64,000 bases of DNA from Macrostomum lignano (GCA_002269645.1 NIVC01000090.1:124001-188000), one strand, 5' to 3'. Counted from the stretch's first letter, positions 6,108 to 61,840 are shown. Notes: generated by a model from the sequence alone, not told the origin. Made by a program: numbers and translations.

Positions 6108-8680
6108 ATGTCGTCTCCTTCGCTGCAGTCTAAAGCCGCTACTACTTCCAGTAGTAACAAAGCAAACAAAGTATCAGCCTCATCGAGCTGTCCTCAAAGC
6201 ATTGTCAAGTCGCTTTCACCGTTGAGTTTAAACGAATTTGAAATTGTGAGCAGTGCCGCATCAGACATTGTGGACAAGCTGCCAAATTGTCACGACAATG
6301 TCCGCTTGATTCGTAGAAAATCAGACGGTAAATTGCTGGTATGGAAACGGATTCACTATGGCAGTATGGACGAGCAAGAGTTGAAGATGCTATTGTCCGA
6401 ACTGATGGTTGTCAGGCAAATACGTCATCCCAATATTGTAGAATATGTTGGCAGAATTGTTGACGAAGTGAAACAGGATGTGTACATTGTTAGCGAATAT
6501 TGCGCTAACGGCGACTTGACTGGCGTAATTAAGAAGCACATTCGCGAAGGGTGAGCTAGTTGACTAATTGAATTACCCATTCACTAATTAGACTTTCATA
6601 TACATGAGTTCACCAATTAGAATTGCCTATAATCACCAATTAAAATTCCCTATATTCACCAATTAGAACTGCCCATTCACCAGCCAGAATTCCTTATATT
6701 CACTAATTATAATTTCCTATATTCACCAATTAGAATTCCCGATATTCACCAATTAGAATTCCCTATATTCACCAATTAGAATTACCTATATCCACCAATT
6801 AGAATTGCCTATATTCATTAATTAGAATTCCCCATATTCAAAAAGTCCCAATCGCCCCGTATCCCCGCCAGGAAGTACATCCCGGAGCAGCAGATCTGGA
6901 AGTGGCTGACGCAGCTGTCGTTGGCTCTCCGCTGCTGCCACTGTCGCCAAGGCGTGAAGGCGGTGCTGCACAGGGATCTGAAGCCGGCCAACTGCTTCCT
7001 GGACTCTGACGGCAACCTGAAGCTGGGCGACTTCGGCCTGGCCAGGGTGCTTCGCCACAGCGGCAGCTTTGCCAGCACCTTCGTTGGCACGCCGTACTAC
7101 ATGAGCCCGGAGCAGATGCAGAAGAGCGCCTACACTGAGAAGTCCGACATCTGGTCTCTGGGCATTGTGGCCTACGAATTGGCCTGTCTGAGGCCTCCGT
7201 TTGTGGCCGACAAGCAGAGGGACCTGGCAACCAGAATTCGGCGAGGCGAGTTCGAACCTCCGCCTGATTGGTAGGGTTTTAGTCTGTTTAATTTGTAATA
7301 CTGCAGGTGTTTTATTCAGCATCAATTAAATTTTATGTAAATTTCCCTAAGTGTTGATGAGTGCCGTAGGTTGTTCAGTAGATAATTTAGGTTGTTTCAG
7401 TAGATCAGTTAGGTTGTTTAGACGATTGTTTAGACTGCAGTTTATAATTGACAATTTAGAGGTTAGAGTTAATTTAGATTGTTTCAGAAAAAAGTTTTAG
7501 CCTAGTGCTTAAAGCGTCGGGCTCACGACTTGAAAGTCGGGGGTTCGATTCTCGATCCACTCGGAACAATCTGTGTCCTTGAGCAATTGACACTTAGCTC
7601 TGCATTGCTTCAGTTCACCCAGCTGTAAAATGGGTGCCAGCATTAGCTGGGGTAATTGAGGGTGTGTGTGGTGACCCGAACAGCAGTACGCAGCCTTCAG
7701 ATGCGCCGCGCAATAGCTGCGGCTGAGCTGTCAGTTACACATCTGGCCTAATTGGGGCAGATGTAACAAATTAATATTAATAATTAATTGAGCTGATTTT
7801 ATCACTCTCAAACGCTCGCCACTCCAGGTACAGCCCCGCGCTGCGCACCCTGATCTCCGACTGCCTGTGTGTCAATCCCGATCACCGACCAACTGTCGAA
7901 GATCTGCTACGCCGGCCGGAGATTCGCAACCGCTTGTCGGCCAACGAATCGACGCCTGAAGCCAGCCTTCGACATTGGTCGGATCAGCTACGCGAGCTCA
8001 CGGATCTGCTCACCGCCTGGCAAGATTCGTTGACTAGGCAGGAGGTCGAACTGCGTCGACAAGAGGCATCGCTAGCGTCGTCTGCCGCGGCCAGGCAGAT
8101 GGAGCTGGAGAAACGCGAGGCTCGTCTGGACCGACTGGCTAAACAGCTGGACGAGCGGACCAAGCAGCTGACTGAGCTGCAGGACTGGCTGCGACAGAGC
8201 GGCTTCATCACCACCCCCGCCGCAGCCGGTGCGGCTACTTCGGTCACGGCTGGCACCGACTCGTTCGGCAATAATGCCATGCTGCTGCTCTCTAGCCACG
8301 ATTCTCCACTTATCGATAAAACATTAACAAGCCGCCGATCAAACAGAGTGCTAGTAGACATTGACAACAGTCCGCAGGCGGTTGTATCCACTACTACTAC
8401 AACTAGTGCTATCGAGCGAGGTCGTAACTCGCCTACACTTTCTAACAATCCTACTATTAGTAGTTTTGTATTAGTAGATGATAAAAATGAAGAATTTGAG
8501 AACACTCTACCGGTACCGTCGATTTCTACGGATGCGATTTTGTCGCCTTGTACGGCGGCTAAGTCGGCGGTGGCGACCGAGGATCTGTTGGTGCCGAAAA
8601 TACCTGCGCGTTCGCCGCCTGTGCCGTTGCCAAGGAAGTCAAGGATGCAGCAACTGCAGCAGAGAGCGGCTGACTGCTAA
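6108..8680 (+). CDS. NEK2/NIMA-like kinase paralogue A (564 aa), atypical N-lobe
   Basis: Exons 6108-6550, 6872-7270, 7828-8680 splice in frame (GT..AG, both introns phase 2). Motifs VWK, HPNIV, HRDLKPAN, DFG, GTPYYMSPE, DIWSLG; coiled coil after the kinase domain; no GxGxxG. Confidence 0.9.
6570..6840. repeat. 23-bp minisatellite (ttcaccaattagaattccctata) in NEK-A intron 1
   Basis: Tandem periodicity. Confidence 0.9.
7497..7775 (+). mobile_element. tRNA-derived SINE family A (NEK-A intron 2)
   Basis: A-box tagcctagtg, B-box ggttcgattc, central ccttgagc..acttagctctgcattgcttcagttcacccagctgtaaaatggg resembling CORE/Meta-type SINE domains; recurs at 20465, 32152 and 54675. Confidence 0.8.
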
Positions 8681-8749
8681 AAAGTGTTGACTGCTCAATC
8701 TACTAAGTGATATCTACCCTACCTTCTAAGGTCTGTCTATGTAACCTGC

Positions 8750-9330
8750 TTAGGTCTATCTACCCAACCTACTAATCTCTGTCTACTGAACCTTCTTAGG
8801 TCTATCTACCCAACCTACCAAGGGCTATCACCCAACCTACCAAGGGCTATCACCCAACCTACCAAGGGATATCACCCAACCTACCAAGGGCTATCACCCA
8901 ACCTACCAAGGGATATCACCCAATCTACCAAGGGATATCACCCAACCTACTAAGGGATATCACCCAACCTACCAAGGGCTATCACCCAACCTACCAAGGG
9001 ATATCACCCAACCTACCAAGGGCTATCACCCAACCTACCAAGGGATATCACCCAACCTACCAAGGGATATCACCCAACCTACCAAGGGATATCACCCAAC
9101 CTACTAAGGGATATCACCCAACCTACCAAGGGCTATCACCCAACCTACCAAGGGATATCACCCAACCTACCAAGGGCTATCACCCAACCTACCAAGGGCT
9201 ATCACCCAATCTACCAAGGGATATCACCCAACTTACCAAGGGCTATCACCCAACCTACCAAGGGATATCACCCAACCTAATAACGTCTATCTACCAAACC
9301 CACTAAGGTTTGTCTACCCAACCTACAATA
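8750..9330. repeat. 22-bp minisatellite (caagggctatcacccaacctac)
   Basis: Tandem periodicity downstream of the NEK-A stop. Confidence 0.95.
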
Positions 9331-10129
9331 CTAAGCACCGTAAACGTACCTCTAAATTTATGCTAAACTGATTCGGGATTTATGTCACTTGTCCCCATGG
9401 TATGGCTTTTTTCTATCATATAATGCTCGTCTGAGAAAAAAAGCGTATGTGTTATAATTCTATTTTATGATATTTCAGTTGCTCGTTGGTCATTCGCTTT
9501 AAGTTGAATAAAAAATGTAAAAATGTATACAGCATACCTCCATTTTATCAAAGCCTTGGCTGCTAAAACTTGTACTTTTAACTACATATATGTGCTTGCT
9601 TAAATACAGCATTTTGTGGTGAGTAGCTTGTTAAATTAATATTTTTTCAACAATTTTTATCGAAATTTTGTGCATTTTGTATTTATATCCGCTTCCTACT
9701 ACTGCTAGAACGAATTGTGTGCTAATTTTTTTTCATGAAATCATTTTAATTTGCTACGAAAAAACTTTTAGCATTTCACTATTGCGATTCGGTTTAACTT
9801 ATTTTACATTACGTACGGTTTTTGCTGTTTATTGCGTGTTTGTTGTAATTTTATGAACACTTTTCTGCAATCATGTTGCTGTTTGTCAATAAAAATTTAT
9901 AAATCTCTACCGATAATTTTGTTTTTGCAATACTTTTGCAATAATTTATTACGAATAACAAATTTAATTAGGGTTTTTTTCGCAATTTAGAATGATTTAT
10001 ATCATGCTAAGCCTACAAATATATGTAACTTTCTGTGCGTGAATTTAATAATTTTCTAAGAAATGTATTTGTTTAAAAGTTTCTTTTACATAGTTTTCGA
10101 ATAGAAAATCTATTTTAGAAAGGCTATCG

Positions 10130-12060
10130 TAAATAGGCTACCTTAGAATGTCTATCTTCGAAAAGCTATCATAGAAAGGCTGTCTTAGAAAGGCTGTCTT
10201 AGAAATGCTATCTTAGAAATGCTATCTTAGAAATGCTATCTTAGAAATGCTATCTTAGAAATGCTATCTTAGAAATGCTATCTTAGAAATGCTATCTTAG
10301 AAATGCTATCTTAGAAATGCTATCTTAGAAATGCTATCTTAGAAATGCTATCTTAGAAATGCTATCTTAGAAATGCTATCTTAGAAATGCTATCTTAGAA
10401 ATGCTATCTTAGAAAGGCTGTCTTAGAAATGCTATCTTAGAAATGCTATCTTAGAAAGGCTGTCTTAGAAATGCTATCTTAGAAATGCTATCTTAGAAAT
10501 GCTATCTTAGAAAGGCTGTCTTAGAAATGCTATCTTAGAAATGCTATCTTAGAAAGGCTGTCTTAGAAATGCTATCTTAGAAATGCTATCTTAGAAAGGC
10601 TGTCTTAGAAATGCTATCTTAGAAATGCTATCTTAGAAAGGCTGTCTTAGAAATGCTATCTTAGAAATGCTATCTTAGAAAGGCTGTCTTGGAAAGGCTG
10701 TCTTAGAAATGCTATCTTAGAAATGCTATCTTAGAAAGGCTGTCTTAGAAATGCTATCTTAGAAATGCTATCTTAGAAAGGCTGTCTTAGAAAGGCTATC
10801 TTAGAAATGCTATCTTAGAAAGGCTGCCTTAGAAATGCTATCTTAGAAATGCTATCTTAGAAAGGCTGTCTTGGAAAGGCTGTCTTAGAAATGCTATCTT
10901 AGAAATGCTATCTTAGAAAGGCTGTCTTAGAAATGCTATCTTAGAAATGCTATCTTAGAAAGGCTGTCTTAGAAAGGCTGTCTTAGAAAGGCTATCTTAG
11001 AAATGCTATCTTAGAAAGGCTGTCTTAGAAATGCTATCTTAGAAATGCTATCTTAGAAAGGCTGTCTTAGAAATGCTATCTTAGAAATGCTATCTTAGAA
11101 ATGCTATCTTAGAAAGGCTGTCTTAGAAATGCTATCTTAGAAATGCTATCTTAGAAAGGCTGTCTTAGAAATGCTATCTTAGAAATGCTATCTTAGAAAG
11201 GCTGTCTTAGAAATGCTATCTTAGAAATGCTATCTTAGAAAGGCTGTCTTAGAAATGCTATCTTAGAAATGCTATCTTAGAAAGGCTGTCTTGGAAAGGC
11301 TGTCTTAGAAATGCTATCTTAGAAATGCTATCTTAGAAAGGCTGTCTTAGAAATGCTATCTTAGAAATGCTATCTTAGAAAGGCTGTCTTAGAAATGCTA
11401 TCTTAGAAATGCTATCTTAGAAAGGCTGTCTTAGAAATGCTATCTTAGAAATGCTATCTTAGAAAGGCTGTCTTGGAAAGGCTGTCTTAGAAATGCTATC
11501 TTAGAAATGCTATCTTAGAAAGGCTGTCTTAGAAATGCTATCTTAGAAATGCTATCTTAGAAAGGCTGTCTTAGAAAGGCTGTCTTAGAAAGGCTATCTT
11601 AGAAATGCTATCTTAGAAAGGCTGTCTTGGAAAGGCTGTCTTAGAAATGCTATCTTAGAAAGGCTGTCTTAGAAATGCTATCTTAGAAAGGCTGTCTTGG
11701 AAAGGCTGTCTTGGAAAGGCTGTCTTAGAAATGCTATCTTAGAAATGCTATCTTAGAAAGGCTGTCTTAGAAATGCTATCTTAGAAATGCTATCTTAGAA
11801 AGGCTGTCTTAGAAATGCTATCTTAGAAAGGCTGTCTTAGAAAGGCTGTCTTGGAAAGGCTGTCTTAGAAATGCTATCTTAGAAATGCTATCTTAGAAAG
11901 GCTGTCTTAGAAATGCTATCTTAGAAATGCTATCTTAGAAAGGCTGTCTTAGAAATGCTATCTTAGAAAGGCTGTCTTAGAAAGGCTGTCTTAGAAATGC
12001 TATCTTAGAAAGGCTGTCTTAGAAAGGCTATCTCAGAAAGGCTATCATAGAATAGCTATT
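10130..12060. repeat. 14-bp minisatellite (tcttagaaatgcta / tcttagaaaggctg) with 42-bp higher-order units
   Basis: Tandem periodicity; two variants in a mostly AAB pattern. Confidence 0.97.
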
Positions 12061-12192
12061 TTAGAAAAGCTAGAAGGCAAGTTAAAATATTTAGGTTGTT
12101 TAAGAGAATCTTGATAGTTTTTAATCTAATGATATTTAATACATAAATGTCAACTTTCAGTGTAATCCTGCGGCCATATTAATTTATTATTA

Positions 12193-14736
12193 ATGTCGGG
12201 CAATACGAGCGGCAGTGGCGGCAGCAGCGGCGGCTGCACCCTGTTAGACTATGACGTACTGTGCGAGATCGGCACCGGCTCTTACGGCACTTGCGCTAAA
12301 ATTCGACGCAAACGCGACGGCCTTATTCTAGTATGGAAAGAATTAAGCTACGTCACTATGACCGAAGCTGAGAAGCGCTACCTCTGCTCCGAGGTGAACC
12401 TATTGAAAAGTTTAAGTCATCCTAATATTGTCAAATACGTTGACCGAATACACGACCGCGCCACTGGAAAGGTGTACATCATTATGGAGTATTGCGACGG
12501 CGGCGACTTGTTGAAGAGGATTCGAGCGCATCGAGAGAAAAAGTCAGTAATCCTTTATTAAAGCTACTTTAAGTAGGCGTAAATGCTAGCTTTTGCTACT
12601 TTCTTTTAAAAAAAGTCACGTAGATACCGTAGGTTATTAGGTAGATAGAGTCTGGTGAATTGGATGGACAACCTTAGTAGAGCTCCCGTGAGTAGGTTGG
12701 GTAGACAACCCTTCGTAGTGTGGGTAGATAACTCTGAGAAGGTTGGGTAGACACCCCTTAGTAGTGTGGGTAGATAACTCTGAGAAGGTTGGGTAGAGAC
12801 CCCTTAGCGGGTTGAATAGACAACCCAGTGTAGGTTGGGTAGACTCCCTGAGTAGGTTGGGTAGACAACTATTAGAAGTGCGGGTAGATAACCCTGAGTA
12901 GGTTGGGTAGATACCCTAGTATAGAAACTTAGTAGGTTGGGTAGACAACCCTTAGTAGTGTGGGTAGGCTCCCTTGAGTAGGTTGGGTAGACACGCTCTT
13001 GGTAGATCGGGTAGATACAACTTAGTAGATTGTATAGACAGACCTTAATAGGTCATAGGGTGGACACCTTTAATATAGGTGATATAGGTGGATGCGGACA
13101 AGCCTTTATGGGGTTAGGTAGACTTAGAAGATTAAGTAGAAGGGTTTTCTGCCTTAGTATATTACCAGTGAAAACTTCATTTAACTCTATAATGAAGCTT
13201 ACAAATTTTAATCCCAATCGCCCCGTATCCCCGCCAGGAAGTACATCCCGGAGCAGCAGATCTGGAAGTGGCTGACGCAGCTGTCGTTGGCTCTCCGCTG
13301 CTGCCACTGTCGCCAAGGCGTGAAGGCGGTGCTGCACAGGGATCTGAAGCCGGCCAACTGCTTCCTGGACTCTGACGGCAACCTGAAGCTGGGCGACTTC
13401 GGCCTGGCCAGGGTGCTTCGCCACAGCGGCAGCTTTGCCAGCACCTTCGTTGGCACGCCGTACTACATGAGCCCGGAGCAGATGCAGAAGAGCGCCTACA
13501 CCGAGAAGTCCGATATCTGGTCTCTGGGCATTGTGGCTTACGAATTGGCCTGTCTGAGGCCTCCGTTTGTGGCCGACAAGCAGAGGGACCTGGCAACCAG
13601 AATTCGGCGAGGCGAGTTCGAACCTCCGCCTGATTGGTACGCGGACCTGTTGGTTGTTAATTAATAGCGTGTACTACGATAGTTAGTGGTTAGGTCATTG
13701 TGGTAATCAGGTAGCTCATTATGTCTAACAGTTAGGTCATTATGTCTAACAGGTAGGTCATCATGTCTAACAGGTAGGCCATTATGTCTTACAGGTAGGT
13801 CATGGTATCTAACATGTAAGTCAATATGTCTAACAAGTAGCTATTTTGTCTAACAAATAGCTTATTATGTCTAACAGGTAGCCTAATATGTCTAACAGGT
13901 AGGTCATTATGTCTAACAGGTAGGTCATTATGTCTAACAGGTAGGTCATTATGTCTAACAGGTAGGTCATTATGTCTAACAGGTAGGTCATTATGTCTTA
14001 CAGGTAGGTCATTATGTCTAACAGGTAGGTCATTATGTCTAACAGGTAGGTCATTATGTCCTACAGGTAGGTCATTATGTCTTACATGTAGCCCAGGTAG
14101 ATCAGTTAATCAAACAAATGCATATAATTCAAGTAGAGTGACATTCAGTTCATTTAATCAATCTAGCATGTACACATTGATTAGTGTAGTCTAACATACA
14201 AAAAACCAGTTGTAAAAGTTAGTTTACGACACAGTCTACTGTCTGCAGCAAGCGATTAGGTTAGTGCTGTACTTACACATATATTAGGATAAGTCTTTGA
14301 CACCGCAATGTAACGCTGCATAAAAACATCACTTTCTGCAGCTACAGTCCGGCCCTGCGAGCTCTCATTGCCGACTGTTTAGCAGTCACGCCGGAGCATC
14401 GGCCCAGCGTTGAGGACCTGCTCCAACGACCGGAAATGATTCCCTATTCGGGTTCCGGAGCGGAAGAATCCATTTCGCCGGAGCGCGGCAGTCTGCAGAG
14501 CTGGGCAGATTCCCTGGCTAAGCGCGAGTCCGCAGTTCGGCGCGCCAGCGCCCAGTTAGAATCGGCGCGACTCGATTTGAAAGCGCGCCAGCGCAGCCTG
14601 TCTGAATTGGAGGCGCGATTGGCGGCGCGCGAACGAGCGCTGATTGACGTGGAACGGAAGCTGGCTAATGGCCAAGCACAGCTGCGGTTTGAGCAGCTCA
14701 GACTGGCTGAGTCCGCTGCGGTTCAGAGATTGGTGA

Positions 14737-14788
<52 letters not shown>

Positions 14789-14811
14789 TTCAGTCTGTCT
14801 GTCTGTCTGTC

Positions 14812-14886
<75 letters not shown>

Positions 14887-14909
14887 GTCTGTCTGTCTGT
14901 CTGTCTGAC

Positions 14910-14990
<81 letters not shown>

Positions 14991-15390
14991 GTCTGCCTTG
15001 CCAACCTAATATATTTATTTACCACGCTAAAAATTGCAGGATGCTGCCACAAGCACGGAGCCAACTATTAGCAATGGTAGGCCGACCTGCGATCGCTGCT
15101 CCTCCTGCCAACAACTGCCGCAGTTCACAACTCCGGACACTCCGCCCCCGGAGGCTGTCGCATTGTCGGCTCCATCGGCGACGTCGTTCTCTGCGGTGTC
15201 AGTCGGTTTACCGCCGCCCGTCGTCGGTTTAAACGGCCGGCAGAGACGCAGCGGCGCCAGTTCGACACCGACGAATTCTAGGAAAGTCCAGCCCGACGAG
15301 CAGCAGCAGTCTGCGGCAGTTCGAAGGCCGCCGATCCCCGCTCCTCGACGCTCGGTGCTTCGCGATCAAGCAAATCAATTGTATTGTTAA
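12193..15390 (+). CDS. NEK2: NEK2-like serine/threonine kinase paralogue B (496 aa)
   Basis: Exons 12193-12542, 13238-13636, 14342-14732, 15040-15390 splice in frame. IGTGSYG loop, LVWKE, SEVNLL, HPNIV, HRDLKPAN, DFG, GTPYYMSPE, then a NEK2-type leucine zipper. Confidence 0.9.
12650..13200. repeat. Degenerate gtaggttgggtagacaaccctt array in NEK-B intron 1
   Basis: Reverse-complement relative of 8750-9330. Confidence 0.8.
13710..14090. repeat. 21-bp minisatellite (gtaggtcattatgtctaacag) in NEK-B intron 2
   Basis: Tandem periodicity, about 18 copies. Confidence 0.95.
14737..14995. repeat. (CTGT)n microsatellite in NEK-B intron 3
   Basis: Direct. Confidence 0.97.
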
Positions 15391-16560: not shown

Positions 16561-16631
16561 AGGCGATACAATAACGCTTATGACTATATTGCATTACAGG
16601 TATCAATTACAACTGAAATTTGAAAGAAGGA

Positions 16632-17408
16632 ATGCAACAGCAATTAGCCTTTGAATTTCCTTTATGGTCGTGGAATTTCGAGCCAGCTCCCGTAGCCTTA
16701 TTCGAATCCTTATGCGGCGCTAATCGCGACAATTTATTATTACCATCGCGACCGATCACTCTGCGCTGCCGGGACAGTGTGGAAGTGTACACCAATGCCT
16801 ATATCTTATGCCTGCACTCGCCAGTGTTCCGGGCTATGCTTGGCCGGAGCGGTAGCGGCAGCGACGGTTTTAAAGAATGCGATTCCAGCTGCATCGATTT
16901 GCCAGATAAAAAAGCTACAGATGTCAGTTTCATGGTGAACTTGCTGTCATCTGGCGGTTTAGAGTTTCAACAGGCCTGCTTCACCAGAGACAACGTAGTG
17001 CCGGCAATGGCCCTGTTTCGCGAATACCAAATGGTGGCGCCATTGGCTAGGGCTGTGCAGTTTTTGAAACGCGATTTCTTAGAAATTCGACCTATTAAAG
17101 AGCCGGATCGGTTTATGGAATTGGCGCTAAGATACTTGATGCTGATTAGGCAATACCAGTTAGAGGAGCTGAAGTCACTGATTCTGGCCGAGATCAAAGG
17201 TTATTACGTGAACGCCAGGGTGTGCAAAATGTTAGGCGCCACAGATAAATCTGTTGCCGGGCGAAATCCTTTTGGCTATTCGGCCGACATAGCAACTAAC
17301 GCCAATAGTTTACTCTGTCCGCTAGAGAATCCGAGAAGGTTGCCGCTGTTTGATCAGCTGGATGCGGCTACTCAACAGAAGGTCCTGTCCGTTTGGTCTG
17401 TTAAGTGA
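16632..17408 (+). CDS. Single-exon BTB/POZ-domain protein (258 aa)
   Basis: ATG at 16632 inside ORF 16620-17408; BTB signature ILCLHSPVFRAML...FKEC...IDLPD; acceptor-like tacAG at 16598-16599 upstream. Confidence 0.75.
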   Translation: MQQQLAFEFPLWSWNFEPAPVALFESLCGANRDNLLLPSRPITLRCRDSVEVYTNAYILCLHSPVFRAMLGRSGSGSDGFKECDSSCIDLPDKKATDVSFMVNLLSSGGLEFQQACFTRDNVVPAMALFREYQMVAPLARAVQFLKRDFLEIRPIKEPDRFMELALRYLMLIRQYQLEELKSLILAEIKGYYVNARVCKMLGATDKSVAGRNPFGYSADIATNANSLLCPLENPRRLPLFDQLDAATQQKVLSVWSVK

Positions 17409-34700: not shown

Positions 34701-37700
34701 AGCAGCAGGCACTGAAGCATCAGGGGAGGAGCAGCAGCAGCAGGCACTGAAGCATCAGGGGAGGGGCAGCAGCAGGCACTGAAGCATCAGGGAAGGGGCA
34801 GCAGCAGGCACTGAAGCATCAGGGGAGGGGCAGCAGCAGGAACTGAAGCATCAGGACAGGGGCAGCAGCAGGCACTGAAGCATCAGGGCAGGAGCAGCAG
34901 CAGGCACTGAAGCATCAGGGGAGGGGCAGCAGCAGGCACTGAAGCATCAGGGGAGGGGCAGCAGCAGGCACTGAAGCATCAGGGGAGGGGCAGCAGCAGG
35001 CACTGAAGCATCAGGACAGGGGCAGCAGCAGGCACTGAAGCATCAGGGGAGGGGCAGCAGCAGGTTAAGTAGCATCCTGAAAGAGCCGACTCTCTGCATT
35101 TCAGTCGGCAAGTCCGGCTTCCGTCTGGGCAGTCTGTCCGGTTTCAACAATCGAGGCTCAGCTTCTCAGACGAAGTCGGCTGAATCACCCAGCAGCTCAG
35201 ATTTTGATGAAGCCTCTAAACAGCAGGACAGCAGTGGCCCGAGTGGCCGAGTGTTATTAGTAGAAACCGTGAACTGTTATCACAACGAGTTCACTCAAAA
35301 TGCCGAGATTAAAGCTTTGACAGCCGAGATAGTGAAGACTATCAGGGATTTGATCTCTTTAAATCCTATGTACCGAGAGACTGTGCTGGCGATGCTGGCC
35401 ACCGGGCAGAAGGTTGTCGACGATCCAATCTATCTGTGCGACCTTGGAGCCGCCCTGTGCTCAGCAAGCGAGCCAGCCGAATATCAGGCCATCCTAGAGG
35501 AGCCAGACATTCGCCAGCGGCTAATGCTATCCTTAGCCATGCTAAAGAAAGAATTGGAAATGTCCAGATTGCAGCATAAAATTGGCAAAGAAGTCGAAGA
35601 GAAGGTGAAGGAGCAGCACAGGAAGTACATGCTCCAGGAGCAGTTGAAGGCTATTAAAAAAGAGCTCGGATTAGAGAAGGAAGATAAAGACGCTATTGGT
35701 GAGAAATTTCGAGCCAGATTAGCTAATCTCACTGTGCCAGCTCACGTGACCGAGGTCATTAATGAGGAATTAAACAAGCTGAGCTTCTTGGATAATCATT
35801 CTTCCGAGTTTAACGTTACTAGAAACTACTTGGACTGGCTGACCAGCCTGCCTTGGGGAGTGTTTAGCGAGGAGAATCTCGATCTAGCTAGGGCTAGGTG
35901 AGTATTGCGCGCCTATAAATTGCTTTTTACATGTGTTTCTCCACCCACAAACTGTCTTCAAATTCGTCCCTCCTCATAATCGGCTTTTTAATCCACCCTG
36001 CAACCAGCCTTCAAATCCGCCCCTTTACAATCAGCCTTCAAATCCGCCCCATTACAATCAGCCTTCAAATCCGCCCCTATACAATCAGCCTTCAAATCCG
36101 CCCCTATACAATCAGCCTTCAAATCCGCCCCCTATACAATCAGCCTTCAAATCCGCCCCCTTACAATCAGCCTTCAAATCCGCCCCCTATACAATCAGCC
36201 TTCAAATCCGCCCCATTACAATCAGCCTTTAAATCCGCCCCCTTACAATCAGTCTTCAAATCCGCCCCCATTACAATCAGCCTTCAAATCCCCCCCCACA
36301 ATCAGCCTTCAAATCCGCATCCCTTACAGTCAGCCTTCAAATCCGCCCCCTTAAAATCAGCCTTCAAATCCCCCCATAATCAGCCTTCAAATCCGCCCCA
36401 TTACAATCAGCCTTCAAATCCGCCCCCTTACAATCAGCCTTCAAATCCGCCCCCATTACAATCAGCCTTCCAATCCGCCCCCATTACAATCAGCCTTCAA
36501 ATCCGCCCCATTACAATCAGCCTTCCAATCCGCCCCCATTACAATCAGCCTTCAAATCCGCCCCATTACAATCAGCCTTCAAATCCACCCCATTACAATC
36601 AGCCTTCCAATCCGCCCCTATACAATCAGCCTTCAAATCCGCACCCCATCTACGCACTGAAACACTCCAGAGAGATCCTCGAGCAAGATCACTACGGCAT
36701 GCAGGATGTGAAAAGCCGCATCTTGGAGTTCATCGCTGTCAGCCAACTGAAAGGCAGCACGCAGGGCAAGATACTCTGCTTTCACGGTCCGCCGGGAGTT
36801 GGCAAAACTTCTATCGCCCGTTCGATTGCTAAAGCTTTGAATAGGAAATACTTCCGGTTCTCAGTTGGCGGCATGTCTGACGTTAGCGAGATCAAAGGTC
36901 ACCGACGCACCTACGTTGGCGCCATGCCTGGCAAACTGATTCAGTGCTTGAAGAAAACCAAAACGGAAAATCCTCTGATTCTTATTGACGAGATTGACAA
37001 GCTGGGTCGGGGCTGGCAAGGCGACCCGTCATCCGCGCTGCTTGAACTTCTGGATCCGGAGCAGAATGTCAACTTTCTAGATCATTACCTGGACGTCACT
37101 GTTGACCTGTCTAAGGTGCTGTTTATCTGTACGGCTAATACTTTGGATACCATACCTGAGCCGCTGCGAGATCGCATGGAGATGATTGAAGTCAGCGGGT
37201 GAGTGACCTAGCTTAGAGAAGCATCTCTAGTCTGCTGCTGCCCCTCCCCTGATGCTTCAGTGCCTGCTGCTGCCCCTCCCCTGATGCTTCAGTGCCTGCT
37301 GCTGCCCCTCCCCTGATGCTTCAGTGCCTGCTGCTGCCCCTGTCCTGATGCTTCAGTGCCTGCTGCTACCCCTTCCCTAATGCTTCAGTTCCAGCTGCTG
37401 CCCCTGTCCTGATGCTTCAGTGCCTGCTGCTGCCCCTTCCCTGATGCTTCAGTGCCTGCTGCTGCCCCTGTCCTGATGCTTCAGTGCCTGCTGCTGCCCC
37501 TTCCCTGATGCTTCAGTGCCTGCTGCTGCCCCTGTCCTGATGCTTCAGTGCCTGCTGCTGCCCCTCCCCTGATGCTTCAGTGCCTGCTGCTGCCCCTCCC
37601 CTGATGCTTCAGTGCCTGCTGCTGCCCCTCCCCTGATGCTTCAGTGCCTGCTGCTGCCCCTCCCCTGATGCTTCAGTGCCTGCTGCTGCCCCTGCCCTGA

Positions 37701-39166
37701 TGCTTCAGTGCCTGCTGCTGCCCCTCCCCTGATGCTTCAGTGCCTGCTGCTGCCCCTCCCCTGATGCTTCAGTACCTGCTGCTGCCCCTCCCCTGATGCT
37801 TCAGTGCCTGCTGCTGCCCCTCCCCTGATGCTTCAGTGCCTGCTGCTGCCCCTCCCCTGATGCTTCAGTGCCTGCTGCTGCCCCTCCCCTGATGCTTCAG
37901 TGCCTGCTGCTGCCCCTGTCCTGATGCTTCAGTGCCTGCTGCTGCCCCTGCCCTGATGCTTCAGTACCTGCTGCTGCTCCTCCCCTGATGCTTCAGTGCC
38001 TGCTGCTGCCCCTGCCCAGATGCTTCAGTGCCTGCTGCTGCTCCTCCCCTGATGCTTCAGTGCCTGCTGCTGCCCCTGTCCTGATGCTTCAGTGCCTGCT
38101 GCTGCTCCTCCCCTGATGCTTCAGTGCCTGCTGCTGCCCCTGCCCTGATGCTTCAGTGCCTGCTGCTGCCCCTGTCCTGACCCTTCATTCACTCCAATCT
38201 TATTTCCAATTCTCCAGCTACGTAGCGGAAGAGAAGGTGAGCATCGCGCAGAAGTACCTCATCCCGGAGGTGCTGGAAGCCAGCGGCCTCCGTCCCGAAC
38301 AAGTCAGCGTCACGGATGCCGCCCTGACCGCCCTGATCAGTCGCTACTGTCGCGAGTCTGGCGTGAGAAATTTAAAAAAGCACATTGAAAAATTGCTCAG
38401 AAAAGTTGCTTACAAACTGGTTGATAGCAAAACAGCCGATTCCAGTACAGCTGCCGACTGTACCAGCATTGACGAAACCAGTCTGGCAGACTTTGTCGGC
38501 AAGCCAGTGTTTAGCAGAGACAGACTGTACGACAGCACACCATCGGGTGTGGTGATGGGCCTTGCCTGGACCGCGATGGGCGGAGCCGCTCTATTCGTTG
38601 AAACCTCATTGAAAACGCCGCCGTCTTTGACAACTACTGCGAAGAAATCTGAGAATAATAATACAGTCTCGCCGACTCCTGCTTCTGGCAGTCTTGAGCT
38701 CACCGGTCACCTTGGCGACGTGATGAAGGAGTCTGTGCGCATAGCTCACACCTATTCTCAATCGTTCCTAGCCCGCCTAGATCCCGACAATGCCGCACTA
38801 CGCAGCGGCGGTATTCACATCCACGTGCCTGAGGGCGCCACGCCAAAGGACGGGCCTAGCGCTGGCATCACCATGGCAACGGGTTTATTGAGTCTAGCCT
38901 TAGACACGCCAGTCTGCCAAGAGACGGCCATGACTGGCGAGTTAAGCTTGACTGGCAAAATCATGCCAGTAGGCGGTATTAAAGAGAAAGTGATTGCTGC
39001 TAAACGGGCCGGAGTGTCCACCGTTGTGCTGCCTGAGGACAACAGGAAGGACTATGCCGATCTGCCAGAGTTCTTGCGCGACGGAGTTAAAGCTCATTTC
39101 GTGTCTCACTATAGCGAAGCGTTTCCGCTGCTCTTTCCCGACTGGGCTGGCAAGATGCCGAAATAA
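31742..39166 (+). CDS. LONP1: Mitochondrial Lon protease (1032 aa)
   Basis: Exons 31742-32093, 33550-33929, 34459-34555, 35105-35897, 36671-37198, 38218-39166 splice in frame. Arg/Ser-rich transit peptide, LON N-domain, Walker [16 protein letters not shown], catalytic DGPSAG and GGIKEK. Confidence 0.96.
32152..32410 (+). mobile_element. SINE family A copy (LONP1 intron 1)
   Basis: Same head and tail; internal deletion. Confidence 0.8.
32490..32765. repeat. Dispersed repeat; related sequence at about 53-250
   Basis: gcgacgcaaatgcgcttcaaacacaacccagtg (about 32733-32765) matches gtgacgcagatgcgctttagacacgacccagtg (about 53-85); shared gcgactct and tcgtctag motifs. Confidence 0.45.
32760..33325. 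repeat. 16-bp minisatellite (agtgaaatcccaactc) in LONP1 intron 1
   Basis: Tandem periodicity. Confidence 0.95.
33324..33475 (+). mobile_element. SINE family B body fragment
   Basis: gtgtacatgcctgacgattagatag..gctgtacaccctg shared with 20762-20940. Confidence 0.65.
34040..34445. repeat. 23-bp minisatellite (tccactatgagaatcagctctca) in LONP1 intron 2
   Basis: Tandem periodicity. Confidence 0.95.
34578..35065 (+). repeat. 32-bp minisatellite (agcagcaggcactgaagcatcaggggaggggc) in LONP1 intron 3
   Basis: About 15 copies. Confidence 0.95.
35995..36650. repeat. Minisatellite of about 27 bp (acaatcagccttcaaatccgccccatt) in LONP1 intron 4
   Basis: Tandem periodicity. Confidence 0.95.
37228..38180 (-). 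repeat. Same 32-bp minisatellite in inverted orientation, LONP1 intron 5
   Basis: Unit ctgctgctgcccctcccctgatgcttcagtgc, about 30 copies; reverse complement of 34578-35065. Confidence 0.95.

Positions 39167-53932: not shown

Positions 53933-61840
<7,908 letters not shown>

What the first reader, a model, noticed from the sequence alone, without database searches (positions are those of the whole stretch)
6846..13639. Exon-limited homogenisation: two divergent kinase paralogues share a near-identical exon 2
Seen: 6872-7270 and 13238-13636 (399 bp each, 6366 bp apart) differ at only three synonymous sites (act/acc, gac/gat, gcc/gct). Identity extends about 26 bp into the upstream intron and ends at the donor GTA. 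Exons 1 and 3 and all introns are strongly diverged, and the tract is bounded by unrelated arrays. Inference: recent or recurrent gene conversion (or exon transfer) keeps the catalytic C-lobe identical while N-lobes and tails diverge. Identical phases would also allow chimeric 1A-2-3B-4B products by read-through splicing or by recombinational deletion.
Basis: partly seen in the sequence, partly recalled or inferred. Interest (0 to 1): 0.75.

Follow-up and report, generated by a model that had tools for sequence, protein, structure and literature searches.

The report
Gene conversion keeps one kinase exon identical
Two old, neighbouring NEK2-like kinase genes of the flatworm Macrostomum lignano keep one 399-bp exon almost identical by copying it between each other, a well-known process (non-allelic gene conversion) seen here in an unusually clean form.

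Summary
Window 6846-7273 and 13212-13639 (428 bp, 6366 bp apart) differ at three synonymous sites, and everything around them is unalignable or saturated. Between the two genes dS is 0.03 in exon 2, against 1.7 in exon 1 and 2.1 in exon 3.

The window is Macrostomum lignano. The genes are tandem NEK2-like kinases: A (564 aa) has a degenerate N-lobe with no glycine-rich loop, and B (496 aa) is canonical.

A second copy of the locus, probably homeologous, was assembled independently (GCA_002269645.1, L001) and shows the same pattern.
- Two substitutions and one intron indel group the four exon-2 copies by locus; none group them by orthologue. So homogenisation continued after the two locus copies split.
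- Gene B of L001 carries a repair scar. About 300 bp of A's intron 2 is copied in after exon 2, followed by a duplicated 96-bp exon-2 end. This is direct evidence of DNA synthesis primed from B on the A template.
- Third-codon-position GC content (GC3) of exon 2 is 0.82, against 0.48-0.64 in the other exons and 0.61 in a third, non-converting paralogue. This fits long-term GC-biased conversion.

Verdict: recurrent non-allelic gene conversion, confined to the only segment that still has homology. It is a known kind of event. Chimeric transcripts are frame-compatible, but nothing supports them.

The parts
6108..6550 (+). Gene A exon 1 (ATG 6108; donor GTGAGC; ends in phase 2). It encodes a diverged N-lobe in which the glycine-rich loop is replaced by SAASDIVDKLPNCHD (about 6249-6296).
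   Evidence: Gene model and translation. Pfam Pkinase hit starts only at residue 65. Alignment with NEK2 orthologues gives 38-46% identity.
6551..6871 (+). Gene A intron 1, mostly a 23-bp minisatellite (6609-6840, TTCACCAATTAGAATTCCCTATA). Its last 26 nt (6846-6871) belong to the shared tract.
   Evidence: TRF; identity scan.
6846..7273 (+). Converted tract, copy 1: 26 nt of intron with the acceptor, exon 2 of gene A (6872-7270), and GTA of the donor. It encodes HRDLKPAN (6969), DFG (7029), the activation segment and SPE (7104).
   Evidence: 428 bp at 99.3% to 13212-13639. dS 0.034. GC3 0.83.
7271..7827 (+). Gene A intron 2, containing a tRNA-like, SINE-like fragment (about 7497-7700). The homeologous counterpart of its first ~300 nt is the sequence found copied into gene B of locus L001.
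   Evidence: ARAGORN and Rfam give no hit.
7828..8680 (+). Gene A exon 3 (acceptor CTCCAG; stop TAA 8678-8680): end of the kinase domain, a charged and probably coiled-coil region, and a Ser/Thr-rich tail.
   Evidence: It is 42% aa identical to B exon 3, dS about 2.1.
8677..9327 (.). 22/46-bp minisatellite arrays 3' of gene A. They are an inverted relative of the array in B intron 1.
   Evidence: TRF; inverted repeats I1-I13; blastn minus-strand hits at about 70%.
10102..12072 (.). 14-bp minisatellite (about 140 units, with higher-order periods of 42, 98 and 140 bp) filling the A-B spacer.
12193..12542 (+). Gene B exon 1 (ATG 12193; donor GTCAGT; ends in phase 2): canonical NEK2-type N-lobe with glycine-rich loop IGTGSYGT (12265).
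   Evidence: It is 62-66% identical to metazoan NEK2 N-lobes.
12543..13237 (+). Gene B intron 1 with a 23/46-bp array (12689-13053). Its last 26 nt (13212-13237) belong to the shared tract.
13212..13639 (+). Converted tract, copy 2: 26 nt of intron, exon 2 of gene B (13238-13636), and GTA of the donor.
13637..14341 (+). Gene B intron 2 with a 21-bp minisatellite (13691-14091). It has no similarity to A intron 2.
14342..14732 (+). Gene B exon 3: end of the kinase domain and a charged, probably coiled-coil region.
14733..15039 (+). Gene B intron 3, almost entirely (GTCT)n (14737-14995).
15040..15390 (+). Gene B exon 4 (stop TAA 15388-15390).
   Evidence: It matches P0001.

Best explanation
Two tandem, anciently duplicated NEK2-like kinase genes of Macrostomum lignano exchange their second exon by recurrent non-allelic (interlocus) gene conversion.

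Inferred mechanism. Exon 2 plus 26 nt of acceptor-side intron is the only stretch long and similar enough for homologous pairing between the genes. Whenever one copy is broken, or a replication end is displaced, the 3' end pairs with the other copy 6.4 kb away and is extended on it. That overwrites the local differences. Because the flanks are unrelated minisatellite-filled introns, heteroduplex and normal annealing cannot extend beyond the exon. So the tract is exon-sized, and each conversion restores the identity that permits the next one. Exons 1 and 3 escaped this loop long ago and are saturated at silent sites.

Inferred consequences. Conversion has been going on long enough, and with a GC bias, to raise third-position GC of the exon to 0.82. 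The catalytic core (HRD, DFG, activation segment) of the fast-evolving paralogue A stays identical to that of the conserved paralogue B, although A's N-lobe has lost the glycine-rich loop.

Shown: the identity pattern, its boundaries, grouping of the exon copies by locus, the A-to-B templated insertion in the second locus copy, and the local GC3 excess.
For: (1) Between A and B, exon 2 has dS 0.034 and dN 0.003. Exon 1 has dS 1.74 and exon 3 dS 2.1. The identity includes 26 intronic nt.

(2) The longest identical run is 264 nt, against at most 29 in 10,000 permutations.

(3) The organism and a second locus copy were identified. L001 is M. lignano GCA_002269645.1, NIVC01000684.1, with the same gene order Lipase_3 - A - B - BTB - CBM_21. 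Orthologous exons of window and L001 differ by dS 0.05-0.11. This fits the 1.9-2.4% SNP divergence of the S/L1/L2 subgenomes (PMC10733133).

(4) Four-sequence site patterns in exon 2: positions 199 and 274 and a 1-bp indel in the shared intron part group (wA2,wB2)|(LA2,LB2). No site groups by orthologue. Seven sites are singletons. Pairwise differences are 3 and 4 within a locus, and 5-6 between loci.

(5) The scar in L001 gene B. After exon 2 (ending at L001 11707) come about 300 nt of A-type intron 2 (to 12010), a GAATT filler, and a second copy of exon-2 positions 304-399 (12016-12111). The native B donor and intron follow. The insert matches L001's own A intron (299 matches, 9 mismatches, 1 gap, including a shared 22-bp indel) better than the window's A intron (269 matches, 17 mismatches, 24 gaps). 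So the event post-dates the split of the locus copies. This is the structure expected when copying runs past the end of homology and must end by microhomology-mediated joining (PMC5104497).

(6) GC3 is 0.82-0.83 in exon 2, against 0.55 (A) and 0.63 (B) for the rest of each gene (Fisher p = 7e-9 and 3e-5). It is 0.61 in the same region of the non-converting paralogue C (p = 1e-4). At codons with the same amino acid, A2 has G/C where C has A/T 26 times, against 5 the other way (p = 2e-4). Exons 1 and 3 show 8:17 and 12:22. A GC bias of non-allelic conversion and tracts of a few hundred bp are documented in humans (10.1101/135152).

(7) Both genes are constrained. Between locus copies dN/dS is about 0.2-0.27 for A and 0-0.12 for B. 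So these are two live genes, not a gene and a pseudogene.
Against: The by-locus grouping rests on only two substitutions and one indel.

No third subgenome copy and no other Macrostomum species could be retrieved, so a cross-species exon tree was not possible.

Both sequences are assembly consensus. Cross-polishing could have erased a few real differences, though it could not have created the identity.

The L001 scar is seen in one PacBio-based assembly only and could in principle be a local misassembly.

The GC3 excess is attributed to biased conversion by inference. GC-biased conversion has not been demonstrated in flatworms here. The three window differences are too few to polarise a bias.
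Confidence: 0.82

Rival explanations
1. A single recent exon replacement (one conversion or exon transfer) rather than recurrent homogenisation. One copy of exon 2 was overwritten once, shortly before the subgenome copies separated, and nothing has happened since.
For: The 5' boundary of the tract is the same in both locus copies, 26 nt and 25 nt upstream of the acceptor, the difference being the 1-bp indel. This fits one founding event. The absolute number of differences is small everywhere (3-7).
Against: Two substitutions and an indel are shared by the two paralogous copies within each locus but differ between loci. Parallel mutation would give about 0.01 such sites. The A-type intron insert in L001 gene B is of L001 type, so it records a separate later event. 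The strong local GC3 shift relative to paralogue C and to the flanking exons needs many fixation events, not one.
Confidence: 0.1
2. Assembly or polishing artefact. Reads from one exon copy were used to correct the other, or a repeat was mis-joined, so the near-identity is not in the animal.
For: M. lignano assemblies are known to be difficult, and 36% of Mlig_3_7 by length lies in chimeric scaffolds (PMC10733133). Reads from a 428-bp repeat at 99% identity would multi-map.
Against: Polishing can only remove differences between sequences that already align. It cannot make sequences about 50% identical into identical ones with sharp boundaries at a splice acceptor region and a donor. Two different locus copies from different contigs or assemblies show the same architecture, with different private differences (3 against 4 sites at different positions). 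Both gene models give uninterrupted kinase domains only when they include their own exon 2.
Confidence: 0.03
3. Extreme purifying selection on exon 2, at protein or RNA level, without any DNA exchange.
For: Exon 2 holds the catalytic and activation segments, the most conserved part of any kinase. It is 60-66% identical to NEK2 of distant animals.
Against: Silent sites and 26 intronic nt are identical too (dS 0.034 against more than 1.7 in the flanks). The same region of paralogue C encodes 69% identical protein but is full of synonymous differences. No Rfam family or other RNA signal overlaps the exon.
Confidence: 0.01
4. Conversion is not merely tolerated but selectively maintained. Identical C-lobes are favoured because A and B act together, for example as NEK2-type dimers that trans-autophosphorylate, or with A as a regulatory partner that is impaired in ATP binding.
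For: A keeps an intact ORF under purifying selection (dN/dS 0.2-0.27) although its glycine-rich loop is lost. Its exon 2 evolves at the rate of the conserved paralogue B, not at the rate of A's own N-lobe. Both proteins have a charged, coiled-coil-like segment after the kinase domain.
Against: Nothing here tests interaction, expression or activity. Neutral homology-limited conversion explains the pattern without invoking selection. Coiled coils were not tested with any tool.
Confidence: 0.12

Closest known systems
Mosaic (partial) interlocus gene conversion between tandem paralogues, i.e. concerted evolution of part of a gene. Reviewed for Drosophila and in general in PMC3924832 and PMC3924837, and modelled for tandem HMA4 copies in 10.1101/2025.10.29.685298.
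   Same: Tandem copies a few kb apart. A tract of a few hundred bp is near-identical at silent sites while the rest of the genes has escaped and diverged. Paralogues within a genome are more alike than orthologous or homeologous copies.
   Different: The contrast is unusually extreme: dS 0.03 against saturation on both sides. The tract coincides with one exon because both flanking introns were replaced by unrelated minisatellites. One of the partners has a degenerate N-lobe.
Human fetal G-gamma/A-gamma globin genes (HBG2/HBG1), where the conversion tract ends at a simple-sequence repeat in intron 2. This is the classical case and is cited from my own knowledge (Slightom, Blechl and Smithies 1980); I did not read it here.
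   Same: Tandem paralogues with a homogenised 5' part. The tract boundary sits next to simple or tandem repeats in an intron.
   Different: The globin duplicates are young and similar throughout. Here the duplicates are ancient, and only one internal exon is homogenised.
Non-allelic gene conversion in human duplicate genes (Harpak et al., 10.1101/135152)
   Same: Tract length of a few hundred bp, dependence on sequence similarity, raised GC content of converted regions, and about 67% bias toward G/C.
   Different: That was a genome-wide statistical inference in primates. This is a single locus in a neopolyploid flatworm, with a physical repair scar in a homeologue.
[quoted passage not shown] A related case, aborted SDSA followed by alternative end joining in Drosophila (PMC2895639), appeared only in a search listing and was not read.
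   Same: The L001 gene B structure: copying from the donor runs beyond the shared homology, and rejoining uses a short filler and microhomology, leaving a partial duplication.
   Different: Those are reporter assays in cultured cells or flies. Here it is a fixed germline footprint between natural paralogues. Both 96-bp repeats carry the same derived base (exon position 322), which favours copy-choice from the B template over simple gap repair.

Membership tests
Interlocus (non-allelic) gene conversion / partial concerted evolution | The paralogous tract is far more similar than its flanks, at silent and non-coding sites as well | tested here: met
   dS 0.034 against 1.74 and 2.1; 26 intronic nt identical; no similarity in the rest of the introns.
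Interlocus (non-allelic) gene conversion / partial concerted evolution | The identical fragment is significantly longer than chance given the overall divergence (Sawyer/GENECONV logic) | tested here: met
   A run of 264 nt against a maximum of 29 in 10,000 permutations. GENECONV itself was not run.
Interlocus (non-allelic) gene conversion / partial concerted evolution | Paralogues group by genome or locus copy rather than by orthologue | tested here: met
   Two substitutions and one indel support grouping by locus, none support grouping by orthologue. This compares two locus copies of one species only; the species-level test was not possible.
Interlocus (non-allelic) gene conversion / partial concerted evolution | Direct trace of donor-to-recipient copying | tested here: met
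   About 300 nt of A-type intron 2 inside L001 gene B, of L001-A type, with a filler junction and a 96-bp duplication. Seen in one assembly only.
Interlocus (non-allelic) gene conversion / partial concerted evolution | Both copies verified in single molecules; shared polymorphism in populations | not testable with these tools
   No reads or population data are available.
GC-biased gene conversion footprint | Local excess of G/C at silent sites in the converted tract, relative to the flanks and to a non-converting homologue | tested here: met
   GC3 0.82 against 0.48-0.64 in the other exons and 0.61 in paralogue C; 26:5 strong/weak asymmetry at same-amino-acid codons.
GC-biased gene conversion footprint | Polarised weak-to-strong (AT-to-GC) excess among recent substitutions | tested here: inconclusive
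   Only nine variable sites among the four exon-2 copies, too few to test.
NEK2 subfamily of NIMA-related kinases | Protein kinase domain whose best matches are NEK2 orthologues | tested here: met
   Pfam Pkinase E = 2e-57 (A) and 1.5e-63 (B). Top named hits outside M. lignano are all Nek2.
NEK2 subfamily of NIMA-related kinases | Complete catalytic motifs: glycine-rich loop, VAIK lysine, HRD, DFG | tested here: met
   Gene B has IGTGSYGT, VWK, HRDLKPAN and DFG.
NEK2 subfamily of NIMA-related kinases (gene A) | Glycine-rich ATP-binding loop | tested here: not met
   In A the loop is replaced by SAASDIVDKLPNCHD, which is 7 residues longer. Its N-lobe is only 38-46% identical to NEK2. A is best called a divergent NEK2-derived paralogue, possibly impaired in ATP binding.
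NEK2 subfamily of NIMA-related kinases | C-terminal leucine-zipper / coiled-coil dimerisation motif | not tested
   Charged, heptad-like segments are visible in exon 3 of both genes, but no coiled-coil predictor was run.
Assembly artefact (cross-polished or collapsed repeat) | The pattern is confined to one assembly and the copies have no private differences | tested here: not met
   A second locus copy in GCA_002269645.1 shows the same pattern. The copies differ at 3 sites in the window and at 4 other sites in L001.

The most novel reading that the evidence does not exclude
The exon-sized conversion is functionally maintained. Paralogue A combines a rapidly evolving N-lobe without a glycine-rich loop (possibly pseudokinase-like) with a catalytic lobe that is continually reset to that of canonical NEK2-like B. 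The pair would then behave as a modular system, one shared C-lobe cassette with two different regulatory halves, perhaps acting as a heterodimer. In that reading gene conversion acts as a repair and maintenance mechanism for a diverging paralogue.
Probability: 0.12. Interest if true: 0.6.

Novelty: new member of a known kind. Interest (0 to 1): 0.35.

Why it matters
It is a very clean natural example of how homology limits gene conversion. Once the introns are replaced by unrelated minisatellites, a single exon can stay in concerted evolution indefinitely while the rest of two genes diverges to saturation.

It has practical consequences. Any phylogeny, dating or orthology call for these M. lignano kinases based on the kinase domain will be misleading. 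Short reads and RNAi or in-situ probes against exon 2 cannot distinguish the two genes. Gene predictors already produce chimeric models here, such as UniRef entry P0002.

The scar in the homeologous copy is a rare fixed footprint of the repair intermediate itself.

The local GC3 excess is a hint that GC-biased conversion operates in a free-living flatworm. That could be tested genome-wide in this neopolyploid, which has three subgenomes.

Tried and rejected
- The repeat finder on 4-17 kb was swamped by the 14-bp minisatellite and did not list the exon pair. I replaced it with a direct offset comparison and blastn.
- Megablast of the window against L001 was flooded by array hits, so I used exon-by-exon blastn instead.
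- My first attempt to rebuild the paralogue C model by brute force failed. I solved it stepwise.
- I looked for A or B orthologues in other species with two large protein searches. Only M. lignano entries were close, so no cross-species exon trees could be built. P0002, P0121 and P0122 are fragmentary or chimeric UniRef models with no DNA attached and were not usable as a third locus copy.
- ARAGORN and Rfam gave nothing for the tRNA-like, SINE-like piece in A intron 2, or anywhere else in the window.
- Rejected: purifying selection alone, because silent and intronic identity rule it out.
- Rejected: recent whole-gene duplication with fast divergence, because dS is saturated on both sides, and A, B and C are roughly equidistant in exons 1 and 3.
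- Rejected: ongoing conversion with paralogue C, because only a 23-nt identical patch lies amid many synonymous differences.
- Rejected: a simple gap-repair reading of the L001 scar, because both 96-bp copies share the derived A at exon position 322, which fits copy-choice from the B template better.

Full report
**1. What is in the sequence**

At an offset of 6366 bp, window 6846-7273 and 13212-13639 (428 bp) are identical except at 7136, 7148 and 7172. All three changes are synonymous third-position changes: ACT/ACC, GAC/GAT and GCC/GCT. Identity begins 26 nt upstream of a CAG acceptor and ends after GTA of the donor. Outside these limits the two sequences do not align. blastn finds exactly two copies in the 64-kb window.

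**2. Gene models**

Splicing the obvious GT-AG sites gives two complete reading frames.
- Gene A: 6108-6550, 6872-7270 and 7828-8680, 564 aa.
- Gene B: 12193-12542, 13238-13636, 14342-14732 and 15040-15390, 496 aa.

Both carry a Pfam protein kinase domain (E = 2e-57 and 1.5e-63). Both first exons end in phase 2, and exon 2 is 399 nt (133 codons), so the exon is symmetrical. Exon 2 encodes HRDLKPAN, DFG, the activation segment and the SPE motif. The last kinase helices are on exon 3.

**3. Organism and family**

A protein search identifies Macrostomum lignano. P0001 (BOX15_Mlig013584g1) is 99% identical to B. P0004 (BOX15_Mlig003906g2) is 95% identical to A. Both lie on the same 492,575-bp contig of GCA_002269645.1. 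All other named top hits are Nek2 from many animals.

B's N-lobe is 62-66% identical to metazoan NEK2. A's N-lobe is only 38-46% identical, and its glycine-rich loop is replaced by a longer SAASDIVDKLPNCHD segment. A third paralogue, C (P0006 and P0033; loci L002 and L003), sits on other contigs.

**4. How sharp the contrast is**

Nei-Gojobori estimates between A and B:

| Region | dS | dN |
|---|---|---|
| Exon 1 | 1.74 | 0.72 |
| Exon 2 | 0.034 | 0.003 |
| Exon 3 | 2.1 | 0.71 |

The longest identical run in the codon alignment is 264 nt, against a maximum of 29 in 10,000 permutations. At DNA level the only other similarities are 62% over 213 nt in exon 1 and 67% over 102 nt at the start of exon 3. 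In exons 1 and 3, A, B and C are about equally distant from one another, at 35-50% amino-acid identity. The duplication is therefore old.

**5. A second copy of the locus**

L001 (NIVC01000684.1:285545-310156) carries the same gene order, Lipase_3 - A - B - BTB - CBM_21. Its exons are 93-99% identical to the window's, and orthologous dS is 0.05-0.11 in every exon, including exon 2. M. lignano has three subgenomes (S, L1, L2) that differ by 1.9-2.4% in SNPs (PMC10733133). The window and L001 are therefore most likely homeologous copies. This last step is an inference; they could also be divergent haplotypes.

In L001 the two exon-2 copies differ at four sites (exon positions 50, 91, 128 and 322), none shared with the window's three. 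Among the four exon-2 sequences:
- positions 199 and 274, and a 1-bp indel in the shared 26-nt intron part, group the copies by locus;
- no site groups them by orthologue;
- seven sites are singletons.

Parallel mutation would be expected to produce about 0.01 such shared sites. At least one homogenisation event therefore happened after the two locus copies separated.

**6. A repair scar**

In L001, exon 2 of gene B (11309-11707) is followed by about 300 nt of A-type intron 2 (to 12010) rather than by B's own intron. That stretch includes part of the tRNA-like element. Next comes a 5-nt GAATT filler, then a second copy of exon-2 positions 304-399 (12016-12111). Only after that do B's native donor and intron appear.

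The inserted intron piece matches L001's own A intron (299 matches, 9 mismatches, 1 gap, sharing a 22-bp indel). It matches the window's A intron less well (269 matches, 17 mismatches, 24 gaps). The event is therefore specific to the L001 lineage. The window's gene B lacks it.

Both 96-bp copies carry a derived A at exon position 322, which A and both window copies lack. The simplest reading is that a 3' end lying near the exon 2 - intron 2 junction of B paired with A's exon 2. It was then extended about 300 nt into A's intron, beyond the end of homology, and rejoined B by microhomology at exon position 304. That is homology-initiated copy-choice, or long-tract conversion with non-canonical termination. 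Such termination by microhomology-mediated joining with nucleotide addition is what reporter assays show when copying ends in a region with no homology to the second end (PMC5104497). The structure is shown; the pathway is inferred. The structure rests on one assembly.

**7. Evidence for a long history**

GC3 is 0.82-0.83 in exon 2. It is 0.48 and 0.59 in A's other exons and 0.61-0.64 in B's (Fisher p = 7e-9 and 3e-5). The homologous region of paralogue C has GC3 0.61, no higher than its other exons.

At codons that encode the same amino acid in exon 2 and in C, exon 2 has G/C where C has A/T 26 times, against 5 the other way (p = 2e-4). In exons 1 and 3 the ratio is 8:17 and 12:22. A local, exon-limited drift to G/C is what GC-biased conversion predicts. 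Such a bias is documented for non-allelic conversion in humans, where tracts are a few hundred bp long (10.1101/135152). That the same process causes the excess here is an inference.

**8. Why only this exon**

Both introns flanking each copy are filled with different minisatellites:
- A intron 1: a 23-bp array;
- B intron 1: a 23/46-bp array;
- B intron 2: a 21-bp array;
- A intron 2: a tRNA-like, SINE-like element and short repeats.

Exons 1 and 3 are about 50% identical in DNA. The 428-bp tract is therefore the only substrate for homologous pairing. Conversion cannot spread, and each event renews the identity needed for the next. The 5' limit is the same in both locus copies, 26 nt and 25 nt upstream of the acceptor, the difference being the 1-bp indel. 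This fits a limit set by where homology ends.

**9. Function**

Between locus copies, dN/dS is 0.2-0.27 for A and 0-0.12 for B, so both genes are constrained. Exon 2 is 60-66% identical to NEK2 of distant animals. It thus evolves like B's conserved N-lobe and not like A's fast N-lobe. This suggests that net flow or selection favours the canonical version. The L001 scar shows that copying from A into B also occurs. Whether A is an active kinase is unknown.

**10. Side observations on exon structure**

Lingula and Lineus NEK2 genes have introns at the positions of the A/B/C exon 1/2 boundary, after SPEQ, and near the exon 2/3 boundary. Paralogue C keeps the SPEQ intron, and A and B both lack it. 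The intron loss lies inside the converted tract. It could have been lost before the A/B duplication, or lost once and spread by conversion. The data do not decide between these.

**11. Chimeric products**

Chimeric transcripts, or a deletion allele formed by unequal crossing-over between the two 428-bp repeats, would be in frame. Nothing found here supports them. UniRef model P0002 joins A exon 1 to an internal site of B exon 1 and skips both exon 2 copies. It has two N-lobes and no catalytic loop, and is most likely a prediction artefact.

**12. Verdict**

The phenomenon, partial interlocus gene conversion between tandem paralogues, is well known (PMC3924832, PMC3924837, 10.1101/2025.10.29.685298). 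This is therefore a new member of a known kind. It is notable for the extreme contrast, the fixed repair scar in a homeologue, and the local GC3 footprint. Interest is moderate to low (0.35).

Noticed in passing
window 8677-9327 and 12623-13139: The minisatellite 3' of gene A (unit TATCACCCAACCTACCAAGGGA) and the array in B intron 1 (GGTTGGGTAGAC...) are reverse complements of each other, at about 70% identity. They form a large diverged inverted repeat around the A-B spacer and B exon 1.
   Followed up: partly
window 10102-12072: About 140 copies of a 14-bp unit (TAGAAATGCTATCT / TAGAAAGGCTGTCT) with higher-order periods of 42, 98 and 140 bp fill the spacer between the two kinase genes. In L001 the spacer is about 1.1 kb shorter, so the array length differs between locus copies.
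   Followed up: partly
window about 7497-7700 (A intron 2); L001 11950-12010: A tRNA-like, SINE-like fragment (GCCTAGTGCTTAAAGCGTCGGGCTCACGACTTGAAAGTCGGGGGTTCGATTC...) is not called by ARAGORN or Rfam. The L001 repair scar ends inside its T-arm-like GGTTCGATTC.
   Followed up: partly
window 6249-6296 (gene A exon 1): Gene A lacks the glycine-rich ATP-binding loop; SAASDIVDKLPNCHD replaces IGxGSYG. It keeps the VAIK-type lysine and the intact exon-2 catalytic motifs, and is under purifying selection. It may be an atypical kinase or a pseudokinase-like protein.
   Followed up: partly
L002 10869-11269 (paralogue C): Paralogue C keeps an intron after SPEQ that is also present in Lingula and Lineus NEK2. 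Genes A and B both lack it, so the converted exon is a fusion of two ancestral exons.
   Followed up: partly
L004 1871-2071 and 2202-2411 (Lingula anatina NEK2 locus): The exon encoding residues 185-254 appears twice in tandem (97% and 100% amino-acid identity to the annotated protein). It corresponds to the 3' half of the exon converted here. It may be a pair of mutually exclusive exons or an assembly duplication.
   Followed up: no
proteins P0002, P0121, P0122 (UniRef, M. lignano): Public models of this locus are chimeric or frameshifted. P0002 is A exon 1 plus part of B exon 1 plus B exons 3-4. P0122 fuses the upstream lipase to kinase A. P0121 mixes a window-type exon 1 with an L001-type exon 3, which may hint at a third subgenome copy.
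   Followed up: partly
window 55750-59400: A long purine-rich minisatellite of roughly 39 bp (GACAAACAGGTTGAGAGGAGAGACACAACACAA...) has AT skew of about 0.6-0.7. It produces stop-free ORFs of more than 1,100 aa in all three minus-strand frames. These ORFs are artefacts of the repeat.
   Followed up: partly
window 14737-14995: Intron 3 of gene B is almost entirely a (GTCT)65 microsatellite.
   Followed up: no
window 16620-17408; 35931-39166: Neighbouring genes are a BTB-domain ORF downstream of gene B and a Lon protease (AAA, Lon lid and Lon_C domains) at about 35.9-39.2 kb. The Lipase_3 - A - B - BTB - CBM_21 order is conserved in L001.
   Followed up: partly
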